Part shown: positions 1,546 through 17,989 of the stretch, in pieces
Position numbering within the stretch: position 1 is the first letter of the stretch
How the letters are laid out: each line of letters opens with the position of its first letter
Source of the DNA: Choristocarpus tenellus KU-1152
Taxonomy: Eukaryota > Protista > Phaeophyceae
Length of the DNA stretch: 32,761 nucleotides
Reading direction: 5' to 3'
NCBI GenBank assembly: GCA_964200185.2
Contig: CAXNAD020000068.1
Coordinates: 1-32,761, forward strand
The notes under the pieces: model-generated
Seen by the model: the letters and a program-made list of their open reading frames with translations, nothing else
What the model was told of the DNA's origin: nothing
Databases searched by the model: none
Translations under genes and position numbers: made by a program

Positions 1546-3744
1546 AATCTTCATTCCTCCAAACTCCACAAAATCTCTGTACTTGTAAATTTTAGTTGTT
1601 TACAATACTGTCCTCCAGCAAATGGTGCATTGGTTGTGCCCTCCCCACCTTGATCTTGGCATCATACTTTTTCTCATCACCCACCTTACACAACTGTTCA
1701 CATCCATTGCAAGTGTTGAGAACATATTAATAGATGCATTTACCTTCATTCAAGTATACCATAGTATTCATTTGATTCAACCATGTAGGGAGGTATTGAG
1801 GTGGTGTGGATAGTTTACTTGAGTCACTACAGCCATGAAGAGGTCTTCATTCTTGAGAGGATGGGGGTATTTCAGTGCTCATGCTCATTTTGTGGAATAG
1901 AGCAACTAAAAACAAAAAGATAGACCAAAGCCATCCCTATGACAAGTGTGTACTCTATGGGGCAAAGGTCAAAGTAATTTGAGACTTGGAGCAAATAATC
2001 AAGGCACTAATGCAAGTAAGAGTGTGGACAATGAAATTGAATAATTCCAAGTGGAAACTTCAGTGCTTGACTTGTTTCACAATTTAGGTTCAGGAATGAC
2101 TGTTGACAGGGTACTTAGACAAGAATAATCAGACCGCATCAATTTGGATCAATCATAGTGAGGAACTAGGAATGCTGTGCTCTAAACAAGGAAAGGCTAA
2201 TTGATGCCACTGTATGAGCATTAGTACAAAAGTGAAGAGACAGCCTTCACATGAAGTTATGCTTGGTATGCATGCACAGGCATAGGTTGTTAACCATGAC
2301 GCACGACACAAATAATGTTGAATATTTTGAGTGACCTCCACGACAATACTGTTTACCTACAACCAAATCTCACCTATTGATGATACCTCTGCACAATGAT
2401 CATTAATAACTATTTCAAAGTACACAATGACCCCTCGATGAAGCAATCAGTGGTAAGAGGCAGACTTGGTTGAAAGGCATCCCTAGGCATCATTTCCCTC
2501 CTTTGTTAATTGAACTTAAGGGTACTTCCATGCATAGATTCACATAATCATACCAGACCCTTAAAATAGGTCTGTCCAAGGGTCAAAATCCAAGGTTAGA
2601 TCAACAGGTATGAATATTAACACACAAAAAAATATTTTGCTAGTTCCAGGAAATGTATTCAACCTACGTAGATTTGTGCAAATATGCAGTTTAGTCCATG
2701 TACAACATCTGAACAGAGTTTCAAAAACGCAACTGCCTGATAAGATCAACTCAGGTATCACACACAATGTCATTGAATGGGAGTAGTATTGTAGAACCAA
2801 AGAGTAAAAAAAAAGTGAAGTCTCAAATCACATCTTGCTTCCAATAAAAATTGGCACTACAGAATTACCCCCTTGGTTATTGTTCTTGACAACAGACAAC
2901 TAATCTGGTGTCTTCAATAAGTTAGATCTTCCTTCATGTTGATTCAGTCGAGCGGCATCTATCCATCTCACAATATCTTCCATTGTAGGTACTCCAGGGT
3001 ACTTTTCAGCAGTATCAATAGGCTATGGTCAAGAAAGAATATGCGTATTGGAAGTCTAAGTCATTGTCTCAGTAGATGTATGTGAGGGACCAAAACAGAG
3101 CAAACAAGGTCCTAAGAAGGTACTGATGTTTTCACACTACATTGGCTAGTCCCTCCCACACTGAGATCAGGTGCTTTGTGTGTTCATATAACCGCACCTC
3201 TTGACTTGACTTGCGAAATGGACCTGCTACTTCAACAGTGTGAGGGTGTATGAGAGTAACCACAAAGTTAAGACAACGCCATTTTATGACCAAATCTCCA
3301 ACACACTCCTGCCTGTGGTGACTGTCCTATGAAAATCCCAAACTGGATAAACTGTTATGATGTGATGTTAAATCTCTGCCCTACAAGTTGAAGGTCAGAA
3401 CACAACTGTCCCTGTGAAATAAGCAGAAAGCAGCTCAGCAAGGACATCTACAGGTGTCCTTAACTCAAAACTCATCAACTTGTCCAAGATACATTCTTGA
3501 CTCACTGATCATCCAGTTTTGATACTGCACAATTGATACTGTAATGTAGTCATTGAACTAATACCTCTCTCCCCTTCAGCAGTACTACCCTTCCCTAAGC
3601 ACCTCAACAACAGACCATGTGGTTGCCAGCATTACATCTTGCAAATAAAGAACCTTCACACTCAAATGGGAAAAAAAATACCATGGGTGGGAGGGAGGGG
3701 CTAGATAGCACAAGCACAAAAAAACTACAATCCTGTCTAGTGGA

Positions 3745-6700
3745 TCAGCCATACATGTCCTCATCTCCTTCAGCATCTCCCTCAGCAGGTCCAGATGCAT
3801 CTCCTTGTGCAGGGGTTGGAGCTTCTGATGTTCCTGGGGCAGTAGGCGTTGCTTGGGTGGTATTGGCTGTGTTGTCAGGGGGTGTTGTTGTGGCCGGAGA
3901 AGGGGCAGATGTAGATGTAGATGCAGGTGCAGGGGCAGTGGTTGCAGCTTGAACTGGCATTGGAGCTGGAATAGGCATTGCTGAACCCATTCCATCCATA
4001 AGAAGATTAGCAGCAAGAGCCTCATTCTTGTCACAGGCCAGATACGCCTGTCAATATTTGAGAACGATCATGATAATGACAAGATATTGTAAGAATTTGT
4101 CCGCACAACAGATGCAAACAGGTAATGGCGACAACAGAATAGTTGCAACTCAGACATAATACAGGATTGCTCCCTAAGCATGGCTGAGTTGGCACCATTT
4201 GTCTTCCATCATTAAAGTACTCAATTTGCGCAGTGTATGCAATTCAGGAACCCTGCTCCTATTCATCAATATCCTGTAAAATTAACAGCTTGACTGCTCA
4301 CCCCACTACAGAACAGGTGTCTAAGGGTTCAATCTCCACTCTCAACTGCTTCATTGACTGTGCTAGTAGATTGAGTACCACAGACATACAGCATCCTCAA
4401 GTACATATTAACAGTGTGTTCCAGCAACTCAGAGAATTGAAGCATTCCATGACCCTCTTCTAAGTATCTTCATTAATAGCCACATTAAACACAAATTCGT
4501 CTTTGAGAGCACAATATTGACTGCGAGGTGTCCTTCCTGTACGTAAGTGCCGTCGACAGCACTCTTACACTTGAAAATGCCACTCAATTCAGAAATAAAC
4601 TAGAGATTTGCCTTATAGCTCAAAGTAGGTGAGAAGGAAGATAATATCACTGCTATACTGACCTTTCTGTACCAAACTTCTCAATAGACATACCAAAGTG
4701 TTGTAGAACAAAGTAACTCACTTTTTGAGAATGATTTACTATACCCACTTTTGGCATATTCCAATTACTTATAAGACAATGTCAACTATACCTTTTGTCT
4801 GAAAATGATTTAGGATATAAATATTAGGTCAAGCTGACGGCATAAAAAAAATATACAAGCATAAAATGATTTCATTCAAAAGATGGAGGGGGCACCATGC
4901 TTATCTGTATTATTGAAGTACTACATTAGAACTTAAAGAATGGTGAAAACCATGTACTAAGCATTGTTTCTGATGCATACTGACTTCATCTTTACGCAGA
5001 TAGATGTCACAAATCATGTCATGAGCAGTTTCATGCCTTCTGAACATAGCAACAAACATGATACGCCTTCCCTATATACTTCCCATATATTTGACAAACT
5101 GTTCTTTACCCAAAGGATTGATTCCAGGGTACACAAACACAGCATTGAGGTGCAAAATAATGGTAATCTGTGGAGTCTATATTTTAATCCTACTGTACAG
5201 CTTTTGTTGGGCTATCAGAAATGATAAAGTTCAAGTTTCAAAGTTTGCCACAGGCAACAATAGACAAGGCTTCATGTAGTTGTGCTGTGATTAAACAACT
5301 TCACCATCAGGATAACCTATCTATATAATGCTGCACAATACCAGCATATATTCATACTCAGTAGTTGAGATGGCAATAGAACACAGATTCACAGTCCCAA
5401 ATACTCTTGGTAATATCTCACTGAAAATTACATACAATATATGCACTTTTATATTTTTGAATTTTAAAAATTCAACATTTCAGCTGTCCGCATGTGTTCA
5501 TTTTCAGCATTAACTTTATTTAGAGAATTCTGCCCCCAATACAGATACAACTAAACTGTCCACCTGTTGTAATGATAATAGTTGAGACAGCATGTAGAGC
5601 AAGAGGAATTCATTCAACAAAGGACACAACAAAGTAAGGAAAGGAGGTGCCTCAAATGTGGTTCAGATCAATCTTAAAAATTGGTTACCTTTATCCTGAG
5701 TGTGGCAGCATGTAGGTCTTTCTGTTGTCTCTGTTTGACTCTACAATCAAAACTCCTTCAAACAGGGTACTGCGAGTCAAATTTTGACAAGAATTGACAG
5801 AATCTTTATTACTTCTTAGGATCTTCTAGTACAATTATTTTAGTGACTGTCTGCAACCTTAAGAAACTGAGAGGGGGTGCTACTGAGCTTCATGAGCCCC
5901 TCTGACTTTCAGATGACACAAGTTTCTGAAGCACACACTACACAGGTGTGGAGGACAAGACCGTCTTGTGAGTGTATTCAGTTTACAGAAACAAGTAATC
6001 CCTACTGGTGCCTCTTTTCAAATTTCTTATCTGATTCAAATAAATCTGAAAAATGCCTTGTTTTGAGAGTGTATTTGGTTTACAGAAGTTATCCTCATCG
6101 ACACCCTCATTCTAATACCTTCATATTCATGAACTAAAGGTGAAAATTACCCTTCAAACTTCAAACTCTCAAAACACACAACCTTACAACCTATTTTGAC
6201 TCTTCCGAGTATATTAGAATTGACTACAAGTGTTCCTCCATTTAATTAGGCAACAAAGTCACACACTTCAATTCTCAAATGAGCTTGATACTGCTTGATG
6301 CTTCTTTGTTAACAGGAATACCACAACATGCTTCTAAACTCCTGCACGTGAAGTAGTAACAAATTAATGTGAGGTAGCAACAAATTAATCGTTTAATGCA
6401 CATGTAGTAAGAAACATCACCTGTGCAGCATCCGATCTGTCGAACCCCAGCTCTGTAAGCCGTGCTACAGCTGCTCCTTCCTCCTCTGTGAGATGGATCA
6501 CATTTGCACCACCTGCTGCTCCCGAGGGCATAGGAGGCACACCCATGGCTCCCATAGCTCCCCCACCCATCCCTCCACCACCAACCATGTTCATTAGCTG
6601 CTGTAGCTGGTCTGGAGGCATGTTGCCAATCACTTGGCTTACCTGCATTGATGTGGAAAAGATGGTAGTCGACAACGAGCTGCTGAGCTAGAATCAAACC

Positions 6701-9700
6701 TTATCCATAGGCCCACAAACTTTGTTTTCATTCCTCTGGGGCATGTGTACAATGTATGATACAGAACATAGACCCATTAATAAATTCAAGTCAATACTTT
6801 CTCAGCTATTTTTTTTTTTGGAAACAAAGAAACAGTTTTTACTCTACCTGGGCAAGCTGCTCTGGTGACACACCCATTGACGCTGCCCATTGTGCACGCT
6901 GTGCCGGAGTCAGGCTCTGCAGGATCTGGGCCATTTGTGCCGGATTGCCCATTCCAGCCCTGAATATATTATTTCACATGGGTTGGTCAGAATGACAAAG
7001 CTTACCCTCGCTTACAACCAACAACGCTCTGCGTACACAGGCATCATTATAGCATTTCTTTTTCAGCATTTTGCTACTTCTAGGAAATAGTACACTACAA
7101 AACGTTTTTGTACTACGAGGGCCATCACTATAACATCACCTTGCATCAAATTTCCCTGAACTAGGCTTGTGAGGGTGGGTCCAAATCAATATTAGAATTC
7201 GCAAAAAAATCAACAGAGAAGAGGCTACTGATACACACCATTCTACACCTTGGTACAGGTACCATTGGATATTTAACTTCGAAGTGCTAGGGATACTATG
7301 ACAGTCATTTTAACACACTGCTTCAATGATATGGAACCGTGTCCTTTACAAAACTTCAGTTCCAAACTTTGCACACAAATGAGCACATCGGTGCAAACAC
7401 AGACCGAGCTAGAATGATCACAAGCTCTGCCTTGAACACCATACCGACTCTTTTACGTATTTCATCCCAAGTAGAGCACTGCACTACCCTACCTAGGGAA
7501 ACAGTTGGAACCATTGTATCACTAAGGGTTGAGCAATTATCATTTCATGTCTTTCCATTCAGATACATGTCTCTCCAAAAAACTCAGTTATGTTTAAGTG
7601 AGGAGAATAGAATACCTCTATGCCAATCTGTGCTACTCCGGAACAAGAGGTAGAATGCGCGTAAGCTACAAGCAACAAAATCTGGAAGATTATTGGCACA
7701 AGGAGATTACATGGTGAAATTGGAATATCAACCTTGCATTTTTAGTTAGAGCATACCAGATAGAATAATGTAATCAGATAATGACCACTTAGTGAAAAGC
7801 TACACTGAAGCATGTACTTGTGATGTCAATGAAAAAAAAAATCTGCATATGTTAAAATACAAGCAGAAAACATGAACAAAAATAATCTCACCCCATCATT
7901 GGTGCAAGGCCCCCAAGGCCACTTGCGGGAGGTGGGGGAACTGATGCAGGGGGAGCTTCCTCAACTGGTTCATTCATCAATGAAATAAATTCCTCCTGAT
8001 TTTCATGGATGCGTGCAAGCAATCTGGGACTTTGTTGACCAATTAGCTGCAGAACTGTTTGAAGAGAGGCTGGATCACGCTGCACCAGCCGTTTCAGCTC
8101 ATTGAACTGGGGGTGTCGACGAAAGTCTTCAAGTGATTCCATCGCTCCTGGGGGAGAAGTTGGTGGTCCTGCATCTGAAGGGGTCCCTCCTGCAACTGCC
8201 TGAGCCATGCGTTCCTGTGGACATGTGCAGGGCAAGTCATCATGATATAACAAGTGAATAACAACACAGATTTGTAGTACCCTGCTCCAACCCTATAGCT
8301 CAGGATCAAAGAAATTTGAGCCAAGGACAACTCCATAAACATACCAGACTCGTGTAGAACTGTAGATTGCAGGTGAGAGGATTAATTATAAGGTGGTCAC
8401 ATACAGTGCAAACTTCAAGTTGGTTCCAGCTACATGAAAAAATCAACAGGGCTATTATACGCATACTTGACCGATTTTTCTGCACATGAAAGAGCCATCC
8501 TCACCCCAAACCATTGCTAACTGAAGAATGGTCACAAGCCAATCCTTAGGTTATGATCAAGTGTCACCAAGTTGAGATAAATTACAAGCGAGATGATAGA
8601 CAAGGATACATGTAATACATAGTGTATGATTGAGTGCCACCAAGTTGAGGAGATAAATTACAAGCAAGATAATAGACAACGATAAACATAATACATAAAT
8701 ATAGCCAATATGTCAAACGTAAAAGAATTTCGCCAAACAATCTGAAATGTTCACAAATGTGAAGACCACGATGTGGACATGATGCAACTATCAAATGCCC
8801 ACTCTTCAGTCACGTTCACCTGGAAATTATCGGGTATTCCTGTCATCAAGAATTCTACAGCTACTTCAGCGTTGCCCATGGCGGCGCGCAATGCTGCCCT
8901 AGCCTGGTCATCGGGGAAACCCATATCGCATAGCTGTCTAACATTTTCCTCGTTGAGGGGAGCACCACCTGCTGGCAATGCAGCAGGGGCTGCCGCTGCC
9001 GCAGGAACCACTGATACTGTGGCAGGAGCAGGTGCGACGGCATCTTGAGTAGGTGCAGGAGCAGGTGCCGCTACTGGCGATGGGGTAGGTGCAGCTGGCT
9101 TGGGCTGCCACAACAGCAAAAATGGAAGAAGTTTTGTATCATTCGTTGGTTAGGCAAGACAAGGGTGGATATTTGGTTGAAGAATCGCTTTAGGAACAGG
9201 GTAAAATGAACCTATTCAATTAAATAGAACATATATCGCGTCTGTAAGCACACATCCATCATCGATCTAACGTGGAAACTGGGTAGGGCCTACCTGTCGT
9301 GGTCAAGTCGCACCCACCTTCGAAACCATGCAAACAATAAAATCATTTTCCTTTATGTTGTACTCCTGGAAGCTAACTTCGTCCTTGAGAACCTTGCCAG
9401 AGTGGATGAGCTTGAGCTGGGCAGCTGGGAAATCGGCGTCTGTCGCCTCAATAACTCCCTTGACTTCCTTCACCTAAAACGCCAAGGAAGTAGCGCAAGC
9501 AGCAAACCTGCATATTAGAATGATGATTTGTTGCGCGCAGTTACTATTTTTCACGGCCTGAACTTCATGTGGCATTCTAGGGAAAAGTTGATAGAGAAAA
9601 TAAGAGGAATTTAGGAGGAGATCCACTGTCTACAAATGCGACAAATAGATTTCAACAAGTCGTGACGAGGGCTCACCGTTTGTATGGGTTCAACCTCCAC

Positions 9701-9745
9701 CTCAAACTTCTTGCCTTTGATCGTTTTCACTGTGAGCTTCACCAT
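3745..9745 (-). CDS. RAD23: RAD23 UBL-UBA proteasome shuttle / nucleotide excision repair protein (~489 aa, 7 exons) with an extended C-terminal tail
   Basis: Exons: 9745-9677, 9473-9318, 9104-8820, 8214-7892, 6959-6848, 6642-6421, 4047-3745. All introns are GT-AG with matching phases. UBL: MVKLTVKTIKGKKF...LKLIHSGKVLKD...FIVCMVSK. UBA1: QLCDMGFPDDQARAALRAAMGNAEVAVEFLMTGIP. XPC-binding: FRRHPQFNELKRLVQRDP...IHENQEEFISLMNEP. UBA2: LTEEEGAAVARLTELGFDRSDAAQ|AYLACDKNEALAANLL. Confidence 0.96.
8565..8698. repeat. Diverged ~75-bp tandem duplication in RAD23 intron 3
   Basis: caccaagttgag...ataaattacaagcRagatRatagacaa occurs twice (from ~8565 and ~8638). Confidence 0.7.
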
Positions 9746-9942: not shown

Positions 9943-12900
9943 ATGAAGTCCATAGGTTGTAGTACTATGAGTTCAATCTACGTAAGCGCAATGTTCATGC
10001 TTGGTGGCGCCGCCGCTTTTCTGTGCCCTAGCCCGGTGACCTTTTGCACTCACACTCATGGTGTTTACAATAGTGCATATTCCATGCCCTCCAAGGGTCG
10101 CCTTCCGTTCATGTCCCTCGATGACAGTGCGGAATCTAGGCAATGTTTCCTGGAGGGTTCTGCTGCTGCACTGACATCCGGAGCCCTGGCTCTTTCTGTG
10201 ACTTCGTCACCCTCCTCCGCGAATGCAGCTGAAGTCAGTGCTTGGAAGCAACTGGAATTGCCGGTGGCAACGGTTCTGTACGACATTGCCTTTGACGATA
10301 AGGATCCGAACCACGGATTAGTAGTCGGAGCCAAGGGAACCTTTCTTGAGGTTTGTATTCGGAAAAGATCGCTGCAATCTCGGTGTGGTCTCGTGACTCA
10401 ACACGGTGAAGTCGTACCTATCACCTCTGAACTTCTCGCGTTCATTTCGGTGTGCCTTCGACCTCACTCACCTATGACTCCCATGATGAGGCTACGTGCT
10501 TAATATTGCACCGACATATTCGCCACCCTGTTTCGATCTATGTGGATTGCAACTTACAGTGTCGTGTCAATGTGTCGAAATTTCTCGGTTGATTGACTTT
10601 TCAATAGGAAACACCCCAATCACTGGATTAGGCAACACTAAGAGGCTGAATTTTTTTCCCTCTTAAAAATATCTTGTGTTACGGCATGGATCCATTGTCG
10701 CTGCCACGTAGACCTTCGATGGTGGAGAGAAATGGGGCGTTCGCACCTTTGGTAACCTGGACGAAGAGGAAGAGATCACCTACCGCTTCCAGAAGGTGCT
10801 GCACATTCATGTATATGCTTCAAGCTCATGCATTATGTTGATGCAAGAAGAATCATGTTCCGGACATACTTTTTTTGCCATGATATTCTGCCTGTGCCTT
10901 GAGGGTTCTACGTTGCTGTACATTCTGCCGCCTCAGTTTGCACCTTTGTGGAAAGTCTACCTGTGCCTTAAAGGCTCTACATTGCTGTATATACTACTTC
11001 CTCAGATTACCCCTCTGTGACCCAAAACAGGTGTCCATGAGTGGCGGGGAGATTTTCATTATTGGTAAGCCTCCTATCCTTTTGCACAGCAAGGACGCTG
11101 GAAAGACCTGGGAACGAGTTCCTCTTTCCCCGAAGGTGAGAAATGATCTTATTCTACTTGTAATGGATGACAGACTACAATCTAGATCGGGCCTTGTTCC
11201 TGATTTCTTTCCCACGGTTGTATGTCTCGAATTAATTGAAGTGCTGTTGTTGGTTAACCTGTCCAATAAGAAGGGACCCTGACACTTTGATGATACTGTA
11301 CATGCTGCATGGAACACTCCTTTGAGGATGCTTTGGGTGGAGGGAAAAGTATGAAAATGGTTTTCAGAGTCCCTTTTTCCTCATGTTAGAATTCAGATTG
11401 ACTTTCACTCAATTGATCGTGCCACATGTGACCTGTTGGGCTATTTATGGGTTTGGATTAGCTACCAGGAGAGCCGTCAAACATTGAAGCACTGGGTGAA
11501 GGCAAGGCAGAGATGACCACTTCATCTGGAGCAGTGTACTTCACAAAGAATGCTGGCATGAACTGGTCCGCACAGGTACGGGATTACTTCCTTGAAGAAC
11601 TCTGTGCAGCATTGTCAAGCTATATATCTCATTTATCAGTATCTGGTTTCTTCACATGTCCAAGATTGCTGGTATTTTGTATCTTACTGATTGATTTTAG
11701 TATATTGATAGATGACATCTACTTGTGTCACTCTGAATTGGTGTATGTAATCATGTAGTAAGTTGTATATAGCATGCATTTAGTGAGATCTATCACATAT
11801 TGCACACTGTTGTGTATTTCCAGGTCAAGGAAACAATTGATGCTACACTGAACCGCATTTCCTCAAGCGGGGTGAGTGGAGCCAGTTACTTCACAGGTTC
11901 CATCATTGGAACCACAAGGTGGGCACTGATTACCTATGAAAATATTTCGCTGAAAACCAATGCGCATGTGATGTCTGAAGGTAAAGGAGTTTTCAAGGAC
12001 TAAAACAGTTACAATTCATGGTTGGACTGCTCGAGGAGATCAGTGAGTCAATAGGTTATTATGAATAGTGCTACACCAATCAAGGAAACCATCATTTCAC
12101 ACATGACATGTATCTGTTTTCCAATTCAGGGATGAGGATGGGTCATATTTAGCGGTGTCCTCTCGTGGTAACTTCTATTTGACATGGACACCAGGTCAGG
12201 ACTTCTGGATCCCTCACAACCGGTAAGTGTGATTACTGCACTGAGTCAAGACAACGTGGAAAGTATCTTGGGTACTACATATTGCATGTATTATCTGAAA
12301 TGCTACACATGATAATTGTAAGCAGGATGCTATGTACTATAGAAGAACCGACACGTCCTTCTGTGCATCCATGAACTAACATATTCTTGGTGAAGATCCA
12401 ATGTCTATCGTGCTACTCACCCCGTGTTTCATTCATACAAGACTTGCATTGGAATTTCTGAATTGCACTGTATTTCAAGGAGGAATAAAATAGGGTTTAT
12501 TAGAAGTCTGAAAAAAATTGAGGTCTCCTTCCAAAGATTTTTTTTTTCTTTGTTTGAGGAAAATAATTGTCATCAGCAACATTTTTATATTCCCAGCCTT
12601 GTGGCAAGGGTGGTTGGTTGGCACTGCATAAATGCAATGTTGGTGTTAGACTTCAAAGGATAAATCCCATTCGGCAATTGAATCAGTCCTCGATTCTCCC
12701 ACCAGTGGAACACCTCGTCGTATCCAAAACATGGGCTTCAAGAAGGGTCATGCTAAGGAGGGCCTATGGATGACGTTGAATGGAGGTGCACTGCAAATGT
12801 CAACAGGAGAGGTAGAGGGAACGTCAGATGCTACTTTCACAGAAGTGCCTATCAAGTCAGGTGGTTACGGCATCATTGATGTGACATGGAAGGTGGGAGG

Positions 12901-14397
12901 GAGACTTGAAACCATCCCATCATTCTCACTTGCCTTGACTTTGATACACTTCCAAGTATATTTTTGGTGTGTTTTCTATTAATACTGCACCAGTACCTAT
13001 TTCTTGGCAAGTGAGATATCGATTTTGCTGTGTGTAGGTTTTACACATGGCACACTTCATGCAACAGGACATAAAGGCACAAGTTTTAACCAGATACACT
13101 TTTTGTTTTGTGTGTGTGGTACATTCAAGCTATGTACTTGTTAGTACACGGTACAATATGTCACTTCTACTGAGTTTGTAAAAAAGTGGAGTGTTGACGG
13201 TCAGTCACGCCATGTACTTGTTAGTACACGGTACAGTGTGTCACTTCTACTGAGTTTGTAGAAAAGTGGAGGGTTGACGGTCAGTCACGCCTCCATGCCA
13301 TGTACATGTCCAGAAACACAAAATTGTTTTCGGTAAAGGAGGTAATAGAATTCCTCCCTGGCCAGTCCAGTGCCTGGATCCCTTCTATGCATAAGCTGAT
13401 ATGAGTCACTAAACATGCCGTCAGTTGCACCTTGATTCAATGCTTTACTTTGGTGCTGTGTCCTATGCAGTGTATGTGTTGGTCCTGTGACATTTGTGTA
13501 ATTGTATGTTTGTAAGGGTTCAATTGGTGTTGTGAGGTATGATTGGTTTCAATGATTGTAGCAATAAGGATATTTTTGCTTCTCAATTGTAAAGATGCAC
13601 TGATGCTCTATGTTACACAAATTTAGAAATTTGTAAAATGCGCAAGTTATTTCAATTTTTTTTGGGAGAGTATCAAATCCTTCTTATTGCTTTTGGATCA
13701 CTTTTTTACTATTCAATTCAATGCAATGCATAATTGTGGAGTTAATAGGAGTTATATGAATGCATGTAAACATACTTTAAGAGTCATAGTCATCTACCAA
13801 ACTATATAGAGAAGATCCAAGTCCCACTCTTTTGTGTATTTTTTTGTCATGCATCTTGTTGTAGCACCACCACAATATTACAGCCCAATGGACTTGTAAG
13901 TTAGTTTGCATCAGACATAGTATGATGATACAGGTGTATGACGTCCATTGACAATAAAATATAGATTCCTGATGGGCGATGAATAATTCAACACACACAC
14001 AACACAATTGCAATAAACATTACAGGATGACAATGAGGTGTGGGCTGTAGGTGGTGGTGGAAGCTTGTGGTACTCAACAGACGGGGCCAAGAGCTTCCGC
14101 TTTAGCGGAGCTGCCTCCAGTGTTGGGGGTAACCTGTACAATGTGAAGTTCTTTGGAGCTGACAAGGGCTTTGTCCTTGGGTCTGATGGTATACTTCTAA
14201 AGTGAGTGCGACTGATTTTGAATGCCTGTTCTTGTCTTTGCCTGTCTTTTGTCGGGGCTGTCTCCTTGAGACACTTCATTTGTATAATAGATGTGCCATG
14301 ATACTTCTGAATACTTTCATCATATAATGTGAACTTAAAATGAGTCTGACCATGTACACCTTCATGTTGTTACAGATATATTCCTGGCCAGGTGTAG
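9943..14397 (+). CDS. HCF136: Photosystem II stability/assembly factor HCF136/Ycf48, nuclear-encoded thylakoid lumen precursor (~427 aa, 9 exons)
   Basis: Exons: 9943-10350, 10712-10795, 11031-11135, 11462-11575, 11824-11918, 12130-12222, 12706-12892, 14026-14201, 14376-14397. All introns are GT-AG with consistent phases. Motifs: [128 protein letters not shown]. The presequence has a signal peptide ending AAA|FLCP and a lumen-transfer segment ending ANA|A. The start could instead be ATG 9967. Confidence 0.95.
10890..11020. repeat. Diverged ~69-bp tandem duplication at the 3' end of HCF136 intron 2
   Basis: cctgtgccttRaRggYtctacRttgctgtaYatWct...cctcag...ccYYtgtg occurs twice directly upstream of the exon 3 acceptor. 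Confidence 0.75.
13132..13290. repeat. Near-identical 80-bp tandem duplication in HCF136 intron 7
   Basis: atgtacttgttagtacacggtaca...gttgacggtcagtcacgc starts at 13132 and at 13212, with only a few substitutions. Confidence 0.92.
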
Positions 14398-14934
14398 ATG
14401 GGTTCAGATGACATGAAGATCTCTACCATTGGAGTATAGAGGCTGTTGCACCCAACCAAAGTTGTTTCTACACTTTGACTGTGATAGAGACTGGCATCAA
14501 CATAACTGGGCAGCAGAATAGAAATGTGCGACAAGACCATGTGATTGAGTAGGATTAGGGTTAAGACTGAAAAGAGTTGCCAAAAGAAAAGGACAATAGC
14601 CAGACCCAAATAACAACATTTGCCCAATATGGATATTACCAGCAGTTCCATATTATTGAGGACCTTCAAGAAAAAGTAGAGGGAATGTTAGGCAGTACGC
14701 AGCTCAATGCTGAAGTTTCCTATATCAAATCCACAATCGTTAAGGTATTTCTAGAGTTCACACTCTCCTTCTAATACCATGTAAGAGAGAATCATGGACC
14801 ATGACCTACGGTCTCATGAGTGTGGGACATAGCAACCATGTGAAGTGAAAGCACAATAAGAACTTGAGAAAATATTCACCTCATCCTTGTTTCTGTTAAG
14901 GTTAGGGTATTTGACATACTACACAAATATTATA

Positions 14935-15270
14935 TTCCATACCCAAACAAAGAAACTTGGCACATGCTCTTGCACCAACTAGCTCCTTCCCAACAAATGC
15001 TTTTCAACCTTCCTACCTCCCACAGATAGGTCAGACTGAACTCAAGTCCAAACAATTTCCCTCCTATTGCATCATTCATTTCAAAGAGCCAAACCTTTTT
15101 TTTTCCAATAGTACTGTCCACATCCAATACAAAGGGATCTTAAGACAAAAGGCGTAGCCAAAACCCGTCCACCACAATTTTATACAGATTTAGTATATTC
15201 TACACACTAAAGTAAACTTTAAGCTCATCAAAATACAGAAGTTAGATACACATCAACATAGCCTTCACTT
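14935..15270 (+). repeat. Old dispersed repeat, copy A (related to 31700-32080)
   Basis: It shares collinear words with copy B: ccata..caaacaa, ttcccaacaaa/ttccccacaaa, ttcaacctt, tcctattgc, atattcYacaca, acatagc. Confidence 0.45.
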
Positions 15271-15514
15271 GATAATGATGTGACATATACGCAGCAACCC
15301 CAAGTGGTCGGCGAACTCGTATTAGTACAGTAAATGGAACAGCAAACGGTGAACAATAGGAAATGCCCCCGAAAACATAACGCACACCAGAGGACTCAAT
15401 TTACAAGCCAAGGATGAATGGGAAGCAAACACAATAAATGCTCCTACGTTCCACCACAGGAAGATATTCAACAAAACAAGATATCATGGTAAATTTTCGT
15501 TTGATCTTCCAAAT

Positions 15515-15715
15515 CAGTACTATCAAATTGTACTCAAATAGCTGTTCCTTTGCACAACTGATAACCATGAGAACCGTCTTTCTAAATGCTCTGGAGCATG
15601 TGATTTAGTTTTATTGCCAAAACAGCAATACCTTGGAAGGCACCTGACAAACTGCACTATCAATGCTCTGCACAAATTCATTTCAGTAATTGGTACTATC
15701 AACAAAATACACCAG
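15515..15715 (+). mobile_element. Decayed reverse transcriptase fragment, Penelope-like
   Basis: It reads TIKLYSNS...FLNALEHVI*...LSMLCTNSFQ / NWYYQQNT. This resembles the Penelope-type segment (D)xxSLYTNIP...LxxNxFxFxxxxYxQ that precedes G-x-AMG, and it is truncated at that point. Confidence 0.4.
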
Positions 15716-17989
15716 CTTTAGGGCCTTGTGCATTATCTGTGGTCGGTTCCTTATGTGATGCAAGAAGATAGGAGATGGACTAAAGGCACAAGGTACATAC
15801 CCTGTGGGTTGGGAACGTTTTCCACGATATTGACAGCCAAAGATGAATCCAGACCAACTCAGTCCAGAGCGAGAATCAACTCCCCATGGTTTCTTTCCCC
15901 CCGTGGGTGATGGTTGTGGTTCTCTTGGTGAACAAGGAAGTGAGCAGGAAACCATGCCAGAGATACATTTCCCAGTATTTGTCACATAGACTAGACAAGA
16001 GGGAAGGGAAGGGAAGGGGGGGATGGAGAACCTTGAAACCACACCAAGTGCTGAGCGGCTACCGCATCTACCATGCGCATATACTAGAGGAACATGACAT
16101 GGTTCCAGCCACTCTCAGGCACACGTCTAAATGACTGATAGAAACTCTCTTTTGACTTGGCACAAATGCCATAGTGGCAACCCAGTGTCTGATCACGGTT
16201 GCCGAAGGGACACAGGAGATGCCATTAGTCCTGTTGGCAAGTCAATAGACCCGTGATGCTTTCAGTCTGAGTAGCCTCCGTGCACTCACTCCAGGAAGAG
16301 GAAAGGATGATGTTCCAAGTAAGTAGGCCACCTTCAAAAGTGGTTTACGACCACCGTCTTCCTTCCACACATGTGAGGAGAGTGACTGGACACACTGACT
16401 GTTCTGGGCTGATCGATGGCAACAGTCAGGTAGCATCGCGGTGACGGAATTTTCAACCAAATTGCACCAGCAAGCATGGTAAGTCCCCCAAAGCAAGCTC
16501 ACCCCACGGCAGTGGTGGGTCGTTGTGTAATCCATGGTGCACCTAGACAAAACACTTGTGTCCATAACCTCACAGACCTCCTACAGAAGATCGAGTGTGG
16601 GCAGGCACCCAAGGAAGACCGTGGAGTAAGGGAAACTGAGAGGCTAGCTTGGGAAGAAGGTATCAGCCAACTTTGACAAGGAAGGCTGGTAATCCAATAC
16701 CCCTCAATACACCATCACACCCAGGCTCAGGAATGGCTACACAATTACTACAACAAACTACTACAACAAGGAGGAGGTGGATGCCATCAAGGCCTTGGCG
16801 CAGGACCTCAGAAAGACGATATACAGAAAACTACATAGTATGAGCAACCTGTAACGGAGGATACATCCATAACAGAGGGTGTTGCAAGCACGCCAGGCAG
16901 GGCTGATGAGGGGGGGGAATTTTGTCAAAAGAAGAGACAGAGAACCCCCGAAAAAGATAACGCTGGAGGCTTCAGTCATTGCACACCTTCCCACTGTTGA
17001 AGTGGAACCTTATTTCTTGAATTCAAGGGGAGGAGGAGGAAAAGGCTGGACTAGGGGACTTCTCCACAAAGTTGCTCCAGGCGGGATGAAGTTCTTGAGT
17101 ACACGCGATTGGAGAGAACAAGAGGTGCAGGCAGCCACGGACTGATGATGCCTGCTGCTGTAACCTACTTCTTCAGTTCTCCGCACCAACAACAACCTGC
17201 ACAATAAATATCCCATGCAGGGACATGTATTCAAGTTTGAGTGAAAGAATGATCCGAGCCATTAACACGTGAACCAACCACACTTGCTTGACGAACGGAG
17301 AAACTCTGCAGTGTTTTGAGTCACCACGGCCAATTTATTTATTTAGACCCTACCCTACCCGCCAATAACGCATGAGGGGTTGGATCTTCAACACTTCCTG
17401 CCACAACTATGGCTTTTCAGGTCGGTCTACAACTGCATGTGTCCAAGTTGTATGGTATGGATTGTCCTTACTCTGTTGCTTGCTTGTATGTTGCTCTCCA
17501 TTCCCCGTTTTCATTCCCTAAAAATAGAAACAAAACCAGAACGATTCCTAAAATATATAGCCCACAAAAAAAGTGGGCCCTGATGCTTTTCTATCAAGTC
17601 ACAACAGCAGAGCGCAAACGAAAATCTCCTCCACTAGTGCTAGTGCTAGTACTAGTACTAGTACTGCCTCAATCCTCGGGTAGCATGGTAGCATGCCACA
17701 GCAAATAGTTGGGTAATTCCTCCCTTGATGTGAAAGCACTGTGTATGGGGTGAGTGAGGCAGTGAGTTGAGTTCAAGTCCAGTGATAGGGAGAATGGTTT
17801 GCAACCAGGCAGCAACAGTGAATCCTAAGGCATTAACGAAACGTACCCCAGTGCTGGAGCTGTGTTGTGAAATGAACGGTTGGGTTCATGTGTCTACCGT
17901 TTTGAACCTTTGATTCAGCCAGTTCAAATTGTGGTCTGTCCATCTATCTGACCGGGGGCTGCACTGTTTGTTAATCGAGCCCGCCAGGT

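What the first reader, a model, noticed from the sequence alone, without database searches (positions are those of the whole stretch)
3745..3774. RAD23 ends in a p97/Cdc48-like PUB-interacting/HbYX motif (…EGDEDMYG-stop)
Seen: the last codons read D-A-E-G-D-E-D-M-Y-G-TGA. Known: human p97/VCP ends DDDLYG and yeast Cdc48 ends DDDLYS. That acidic-hydrophobic-Tyr-X tail binds PUB domains (PNGase) and PUL domains (Ufd3/PLAA) and fits the HbYX motif that docks in 20S proteasome alpha pockets; the OTULIN PUB-interacting motif is EEDMYR. Yeast, animal and plant Rad23 proteins end right after UBA2. Inference: this shuttle factor may mimic the p97 tail. It could recruit PUB/PUL cofactors without p97, compete with p97 for them, or dock on 20S, possibly switched by Tyr phosphorylation. 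That would be an unusual wiring of ERAD/proteasome delivery, and it is the best candidate here for an undescribed system.
Basis: partly seen in the sequence, partly recalled or inferred. Interest (0 to 1): 0.85.

Follow-up and report, generated by a model that had tools for sequence, protein, structure and literature searches.

The report
Stramenopile RAD23 carries a p97-like tail
In brown algae, diatoms and oomycetes, the proteasome shuttle protein RAD23 ends in a conserved copy of the docking tag normally found at the end of the p97/Cdc48 ATPase, so it may recruit p97's tail-binding cofactors itself; no binding has been tested yet.

Summary
Observation confirmed. The window is from the brown alga Choristocarpus tenellus. 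Its seven-exon RAD23 (minus strand, 9745-3745; 489 aa) ends UBA2 + 76-aa disordered linker + E-D-M-Y-G-stop. Spliced contigs of one public run support the last exon and the stop.

The motif is not a one-off. Of the 120 closest homologues, 108 end in [DE]-[DNAE]-[MI]-Y-x-COOH with Tyr fixed at -2, while the tail varies from 17 to 96 aa. It occurs in brown algae, xanthophytes, raphidophytes, pelagophytes, dictyochophytes, Mallomonas, diatoms and oomycetes. It is absent from human and yeast RAD23, from 31 outgroup rows, from Paraphysomonas and from this genome's second RAD23 paralogue.

Best reading (0.62): a p97-type C-terminal PUB/PUL-binding motif (PIM). The genome has at least 9 PUB hits, Ufd3 and Ufd2. 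The -3 residue is always Met or Ile, never Cdc48's Leu, which hints at a selective reader. 20S HbYX docking is less likely (0.15).

Binding was not testable here. Verdict: new variant of a known kind.

The parts
9677..9745 (-). RAD23 exon 1 (ATG at 9745; start of UBL)
   Evidence: PF00240, weak; loose end in run X3 matches it
9318..9473 (-). exon 2, UBL domain
   Evidence: PF00240 E 1.8e-12; joint 9104/9318
8820..9104 (-). exon 3, Pro/Ala linker + UBA1
   Evidence: PF00627 E 1.4e-12; joints
7892..8214 (-). exon 4, XPC-binding (STI1) domain
   Evidence: PF09280 E 3.2e-20; joints
6848..6959 (-). exon 5, first half of an extra Met/Gln-rich helical domain (residues about 284-336)
   Evidence: four helices, pLDDT 82-89; joints
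6421..6642 (-). exon 6, rest of the extra helical domain, Gly linker, first half of UBA2
   Evidence: PF00627 partial; joints
3991..4047 (-). exon 7, last 19 codons of UBA2
   Evidence: joint 6420/4046 after a 2373-nt GT-AG intron
3763..3990 (-). 76-aa Ala/Pro/Thr-rich, lysine-free, acidic disordered linker
   Evidence: pLDDT about 42-50, no secondary structure; tail net charge -9, 0 Lys
3748..3762 (-). conserved terminal motif E-D-M-Y-G (Tyr codon 3751-3753), p97-tail/PIM-like
3745..3747 (-). TGA stop, placing Tyr at -2 with a free carboxylate after Gly

Best explanation
Stramenopile RAD23 has gained a tethered p97/Cdc48-type C-terminal PUB-interacting motif (PIM). Shown: the gene, the spliced last exon, the predicted-disordered linker, conservation of acidic-acidic-[MI]-Y-x at the free C-terminus across ochrophytes and oomycetes, and candidate readers in the genome. 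Inferred: the [MI]-Y pair plugs into the hydrophobic pocket of a PUB (or PUL) domain, the acidic residues and terminal carboxylate pair with its basic rim, and the variable linker lets RAD23 hold that cofactor while the UBAs hold polyubiquitin and the UBL docks on the 19S cap. The likely outcome is hand-off: RAD23 takes a tail-binding cofactor with its substrate (PNGase, a UBL-PUB or UBXN6-like protein, Ufd3 or Ufd2) from Cdc48, or recruits it without Cdc48. The acidic, low-complexity, lysine-free linker would keep the new tail from becoming a degradation start site on RAD23 itself. The partner is not identified.
For: Motif in 108 of 120 nearest homologues with Tyr invariant at -2 and tail 17-96 aa. 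Among 197 motif tails: -5 D/E 194, -4 D 174, -3 M 166 or I 31. Named carriers in seven ochrophyte classes and in oomycetes, with a dissimilar low-complexity linker. 0 of 31 rows outside the stramenopile-containing clade have it. Same layout as the human p97 tail and the OTULIN PIM EEDMYR; PUB recognition rests on the hydrophobic-Tyr pair, an upstream Asp and, for PNGase, the terminal carboxylate (PMC4017264). Readers exist: 9 PUB hits, several keeping the residues aligned to NGLY1 N41/K50/Y51/R55/N58 (L004, L005), a PFU/Ufd3 hit and a Ufd2 hit. Oomycete PNGases end in Jacalin-PUB. Ufd2 and Ufd3 bind the Cdc48 tail and Rad23 binds Ufd2 in yeast (PMC4192671).
Against: No binding data. The -3 residue is never Leu as in Cdc48, and Met was suggested to be too large for the mammalian PNGase pocket. 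The Jacalin-PUB exon that probably ends this alga's PNGase (L008, not physically linked to the catalytic exons) has lost N41/K50/Y51, so PNGase is a doubtful partner here. The motif is lost in Paraphysomonas and others and absent from the second paralogue, so it is dispensable. Cdc48 keeps its own tail in this genome, so RAD23 is not replacing a lost one.
Confidence: 0.62

Rival explanations
1. HbYX motif: the tail inserts into an alpha-ring pocket of the 20S core (the free end of a singly capped 26S, or free 20S), tethering RAD23 or helping to open the gate.
For: [MI]-Y-x-COOH fits the HbYX letter definition (PMC4192671; PMC8907193). The linker is long and flexible. RAD23 is a proteasome-associated protein.
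Against: The last residue is Asp in 103 of 197 tails, while human 20S prefers Ala/Thr at P1 and Tyr at P3 (a different organism). HbYX does not call for the acidic -5/-4 pair that is conserved here. A single motif is weak without multivalency. Whether eukaryotic p97's own HbYX caps 20S is debated (PMC11475706).
Confidence: 0.15
2. A different reader or role: the terminus binds a non-PUB/PUL partner (for example a carboxylate clamp, an E3 or a phosphotyrosine reader), or is a regulated degradation start or cap that sets RAD23's own half-life, and the p97 likeness is convergent.
For: Strict Met/Ile instead of Leu and frequent terminal Asp differ from Cdc48 tails. [quoted passage not shown]
Against: The register acidic-acidic-hydrophobic-Tyr-x-COOH matches a known ligand class in the same pathway. 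Acidic, biased tails are poor initiation sites, and a protective cap would not need an invariant Tyr.
Confidence: 0.19
3. Artefact or neutral sequence (wrong last exon, or a chance acidic end).
For: The DNA pattern alone occurs at chance level genome-wide. Only one spliced run from one study was available.
Against: Spliced joint and intact stop. 194 of 227 tails match against 0.05% shuffled. Kept between oomycetes and ochrophytes while the linker turned over.
Confidence: 0.04

Closest known systems
RAD23/HR23 ubiquitin shuttle factors (yeast Rad23, human HR23A/B)
   Same: UBL-UBA1-XPC-binding-UBA2 order; top fold match is hHR23A.
   Different: Human and yeast proteins end 5-7 residues after UBA2. 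This one adds an 81-aa tail with a conserved terminal motif, and an extra helical domain before UBA2.
p97/VCP/Cdc48 C-terminal PIM (DDDLYG; binds PNGase, UBXD1 and HOIP PUB, PLAA/Ufd3 PUL, yeast Ufd2)
   Same: Acidic-acidic-hydrophobic-Tyr-x at the free C-terminus after a disordered linker (Gly-rich in diatoms and oomycetes).
   Different: Sits on a monomeric shuttle, not a hexameric ATPase. Met/Ile instead of Leu at -3. Last residue often Asp.
OTULIN PIM (EEDMYR, binds HOIP PUB)
   Same: Acidic run followed by Met-Tyr; a non-p97 protein using a p97-like PIM.
   Different: OTULIN's motif is internal and HOIP-specific. This one is strictly terminal, and no HOIP-like reader was sought here.
HbYX motifs (PAN, Rpt2/3/5, PA200, PI31, PAC1/2)
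   Same: Hydrophobic-Tyr-x-COOH.
   Different: Conserved upstream acidic pair and frequent terminal Asp. RAD23 is not mentioned in the main text of the ProEnd HbYX catalogue (its supplements are not held).

Membership tests
RAD23 | N-terminal UBL | tested here: met
   PF00240 on exons 1-2
RAD23 | two UBA domains flanking an XPC-binding domain | tested here: met
RAD23 | binds polyubiquitin and the 19S cap | not testable with these tools
   inferred from family
p97-type C-terminal PIM | Tyr at -2 with a free C-terminus after one more residue | tested here: met
   197 of 197 motif tails by selection; 108 of 120 nearest homologues; stop intact in spliced contig
p97-type C-terminal PIM | hydrophobic residue at -3 (Leu in p97, Met in OTULIN) | tested here: met
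   Met 166, Ile 31, Leu 0
p97-type C-terminal PIM | acidic residues at -4/-5 | tested here: met
   -4 D 174/197; -5 D/E 194/197
p97-type C-terminal PIM | exposed in a disordered region | tested here: met
   predicted only: pLDDT about 42-51, no secondary structure after residue 408
p97-type C-terminal PIM | cognate PUB/PUL domains with an intact pocket in the same genome | tested here: inconclusive
   pocket residues kept in L004 and L005, degenerate in the probable PNGase PUB L008; PUL itself not detected, uninformative control; PFU detected
p97-type C-terminal PIM | Tyr-dependent binding to a PUB/PUL domain, blocked by Tyr phosphorylation | not testable with these tools
   no complex prediction or binding assay available
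HbYX 20S activator motif | hydrophobic-Tyr-x at the C-terminus | tested here: met
HbYX 20S activator motif | P1/P3 residues that suit eukaryotic 20S (human: Ala/Thr at P1, Tyr at P3) | tested here: not met
   P1 mostly D/G/S/N, P3 M/I against PMC8907193; preferences of stramenopile 20S are unknown
HbYX 20S activator motif | binds alpha pockets or opens the gate | not testable with these tools
   needs an assay

The most novel reading that the evidence does not exclude
Across stramenopiles the ubiquitin shuttle mimics the Cdc48 tail to strip tail-bound cofactors (Ufd2, Ufd3 or PUB proteins) and their substrates from Cdc48. This would be a built-in, possibly phospho-switched Cdc48-to-proteasome hand-off, with a reader tuned to Met/Ile-Tyr rather than Leu-Tyr.
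Probability: 0.3. Interest if true: 0.8.

Novelty: new variant of a known kind. Interest (0 to 1): 0.6.

Why it matters
The C-terminal PIM is described in the papers read here only for p97/Cdc48; the other PIM covered there (OTULIN) is internal. A RAD23 that has kept one across oomycetes, diatoms and brown algae suggests that the Cdc48-to-proteasome relay is wired differently in a major eukaryotic lineage. How substrates leave Cdc48 for the shuttles is still only partly understood, and this gives a natural five-residue handle to test it in tractable models (Phaeodactylum, Ectocarpus). It also departs from the rule that Rad23 survives at the proteasome by ending in a folded UBA2.

Tried and rejected
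Wrong or alternative last exon: only one UBA2-completing exon exists in the window and the joint is in spliced contigs; a minor alternative 3' end cannot be excluded from contigs.
Species-specific oddity: rejected.
Compensation for a lost Cdc48 tail: one Cdc48 ends in DDLYG (L043). A second candidate last exon ends EEDLYS (L068) but is not linked to the other Cdc48 exons on contigs C3151/C11541.
Genome-wide DNA pattern search for other motif-bearing proteins gave chance-level counts and nothing else convincing.
PUL and Rad4 family searches were blank with uninformative controls.
Cluster look-ups named few of the divergent sequences, so the outer taxonomic limit (Bigyra, alveolates, rhizarians, haptophytes) is unresolved.
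The IQ-TREE run did not finish; the tree is FastTree on tail-stripped sequences.
Literature searches found no mention of the motif. Smith 2007, Bohm 2011 and Fishbain 2011 are not held and were used only through papers citing them. My recollection that some PI31 tails end in a similar acidic-Met-aromatic run could not be confirmed and is not used as evidence.

Full report
Gene and observation. The minus strand carries a seven-exon RAD23: 9745-9677, 9473-9318, 9104-8820, 8214-7892, 6959-6848, 6642-6421 and 4047-3745. All introns are GT-AG and the phases add up to 489 codons. Exon-by-exon Pfam gives UBL, UBA1, XPC-binding and the first half of UBA2. The last exon supplies the rest of UBA2, an 81-aa tail and the stop. 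Run X3 (library not on record, but its contigs are spliced) shows five GT-AG joints, including the 2373-nt last intron at depth about 1755, and no change at the stop. This is one run of one study. The model has folded UBL, UBA1, XPC-binding, an extra four-helix domain and UBA2, then no structure after residue 408.

Conservation. One DNA match is chance-level (26 hits against 31 control), so the case rests on orthologues. Of the 120 best homologues, 108 end in [DE]-[DNAE]-[MI]-Y-x, with tails of 17-96 aa. Across all fetched RAD23s, 194 of 227 tails of at least 10 aa match, against 0.05% after shuffling. In 197 motif tails, -5 is D/E in 194, -4 is D in 174, -3 is M (166) or I (31) and never L, and -1 is D 103, G 36, S 29, N 20. 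These rows are not independent and diatoms dominate, so named examples matter more: Ectocarpus, Tribonema, Chattonella, Pelagomonas, Rhizochromulina, Mallomonas, Nitzschia, Leptocylindrus, Saprolegnia, Phytophthora and Pythium all have it (names). The linker composition meanwhile switches from Gly/Asp-rich to Pro/Ala/Thr-rich. On a FastTree of tail-stripped proteins, 55 strict and 2 near matches fall in an 87-row clade that holds all named stramenopiles, and none of the 31 other rows has it (most rows are unnamed, support 93). Human HR23A/B and yeast Rad23 end 5-7 residues after UBA2. Losses exist: Paraphysomonas imperforata and some unnamed rows. This genome's second, divergent RAD23 (contig C597) stops three residues after UBA2 (not RNA-checked).

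What the motif resembles. Human p97 ends DDDLYG. PUB domains read this tail through the hydrophobic-Tyr pair; PNGase also binds the terminal carboxylate through Arg55; Tyr phosphorylation blocks binding; OTULIN uses an internal EEDMYR for HOIP (PMC4017264). PLAA/Ufd3 PUL and yeast Ufd2 bind the same tail, and Rad23 binds Ufd2 through its UBL (PMC5468458; PMC4192671). The RAD23 motif keeps every sequence feature of this class. It also fits HbYX by letter. However, human 20S prefers Ala/Thr last and Tyr at -3 (PMC8907193), whereas Asp is the commonest last residue here, and HbYX does not explain the acidic pair.

Candidate readers. The genome has nine PUB hits. They include a UBL-PUB (L004) and L005, which keep the residues aligned to NGLY1 N41, K50, Y/F51, R/K55 and N58; a PUB protein read by eye as UBXN6-like (L009); PUB plus EF-hand (L006); and Jacalin-PUB (L008). 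Ufd3 (PFU) and Ufd2 are present. Oomycete PNGases end in Jacalin-PUB with most pocket residues kept. L008 is the best match to the Saprolegnia PNGase PUB among this genome's PUB loci and probably ends the algal PNGase, whose catalytic exons are on another contig; its pocket is degenerate. PNGase is therefore a plausible partner in oomycetes but doubtful here. Cdc48 keeps a Leu-Tyr tail in this genome, so both tails coexist, and the strict Met/Ile versus Leu difference suggests a reader that tells them apart (inference).

Mechanism. Most likely RAD23 uses the tail as a tethered PIM to recruit, or take over from Cdc48, a tail-binding cofactor while carrying ubiquitinated cargo to the 19S (0.62). 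[quoted passage not shown] The tails here are acidic, low-complexity and nearly lysine-free (7 of 197 have any Lys), which would let the shuttle carry a tail and survive (inference). Rivals: another reader or a stability role (0.19), 20S HbYX docking (0.15), artefact (0.04). No binding step is shown.

Novelty. No paper in the searchable library mentions the motif. That includes a SELMA phylogeny that treats Rad23 and the Cdc48 DDDLYS tail, the HbYX catalogue ProEnd main text and two papers on stramenopile RAD23. Subscription journals are mostly not covered. The scan's earlier notes have nothing on it. The gene is an ordinary RAD23 member; the tail is a real, lineage-wide and apparently undescribed addition whose function is inferred. 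New variant of a known kind, interest 0.6.

Noticed in passing
window:6959-6530 (-), P0001 residues about 284-336: An extra well-folded Met/Gln-rich four-helix domain (STI1-like by eye) lies between the XPC-binding domain and UBA2 and is conserved in the stramenopile alignment A1; no Pfam hit on exon 5.
   Followed up: partly
G000:C597 about 11900-16300 (+), L015: Second, divergent RAD23 paralogue that ends right after UBA2 without the tail; possible division of labour.
   Followed up: partly
L008 (G000:C4961) and P0380/P0395: Oomycete PNGases carry C-terminal Jacalin-PUB domains (animal NGLY1 has PUB at the N-terminus). Other PNGases in the hit list carry PUL, AZUL, UBL or thioredoxin plus F5/8 domains instead, i.e. 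repeated swapping of the accessory modules.
   Followed up: partly
diatom and oomycete RAD23 tails (e.g. P0175, P0208): After UBA2 many have an aromatic G-F-G-F-like patch followed by a Gly-rich run, reminiscent of the p97 pre-tail; could reflect origin from a Cdc48 3' end or just low complexity.
   Followed up: no
P0254 and P0157: Labels look like contamination: an 'Ectocarpus fasciculatus' RAD23 groups with chrysophyte-like rows, and a sequence labelled with the ciliate name Tiarina has a diatom-like tail.
   Followed up: no
window:9919-13000 (+): Ycf48/HCF136 (PF14870) gene head-to-head with RAD23, starts about 250 nt apart; probably a shared promoter region.
   Followed up: partly
window: about 2100-3744: The spliced-run contig holding the last exon continues about 1.4 kb beyond position 3550, suggesting a 3' UTR of about 1.6 kb.
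   Followed up: no
window:24797-26734 (+): Glu-rich ORF followed by actin-like pieces (by eye; no Pfam actin hit on the two ORFs tested).
   Followed up: no
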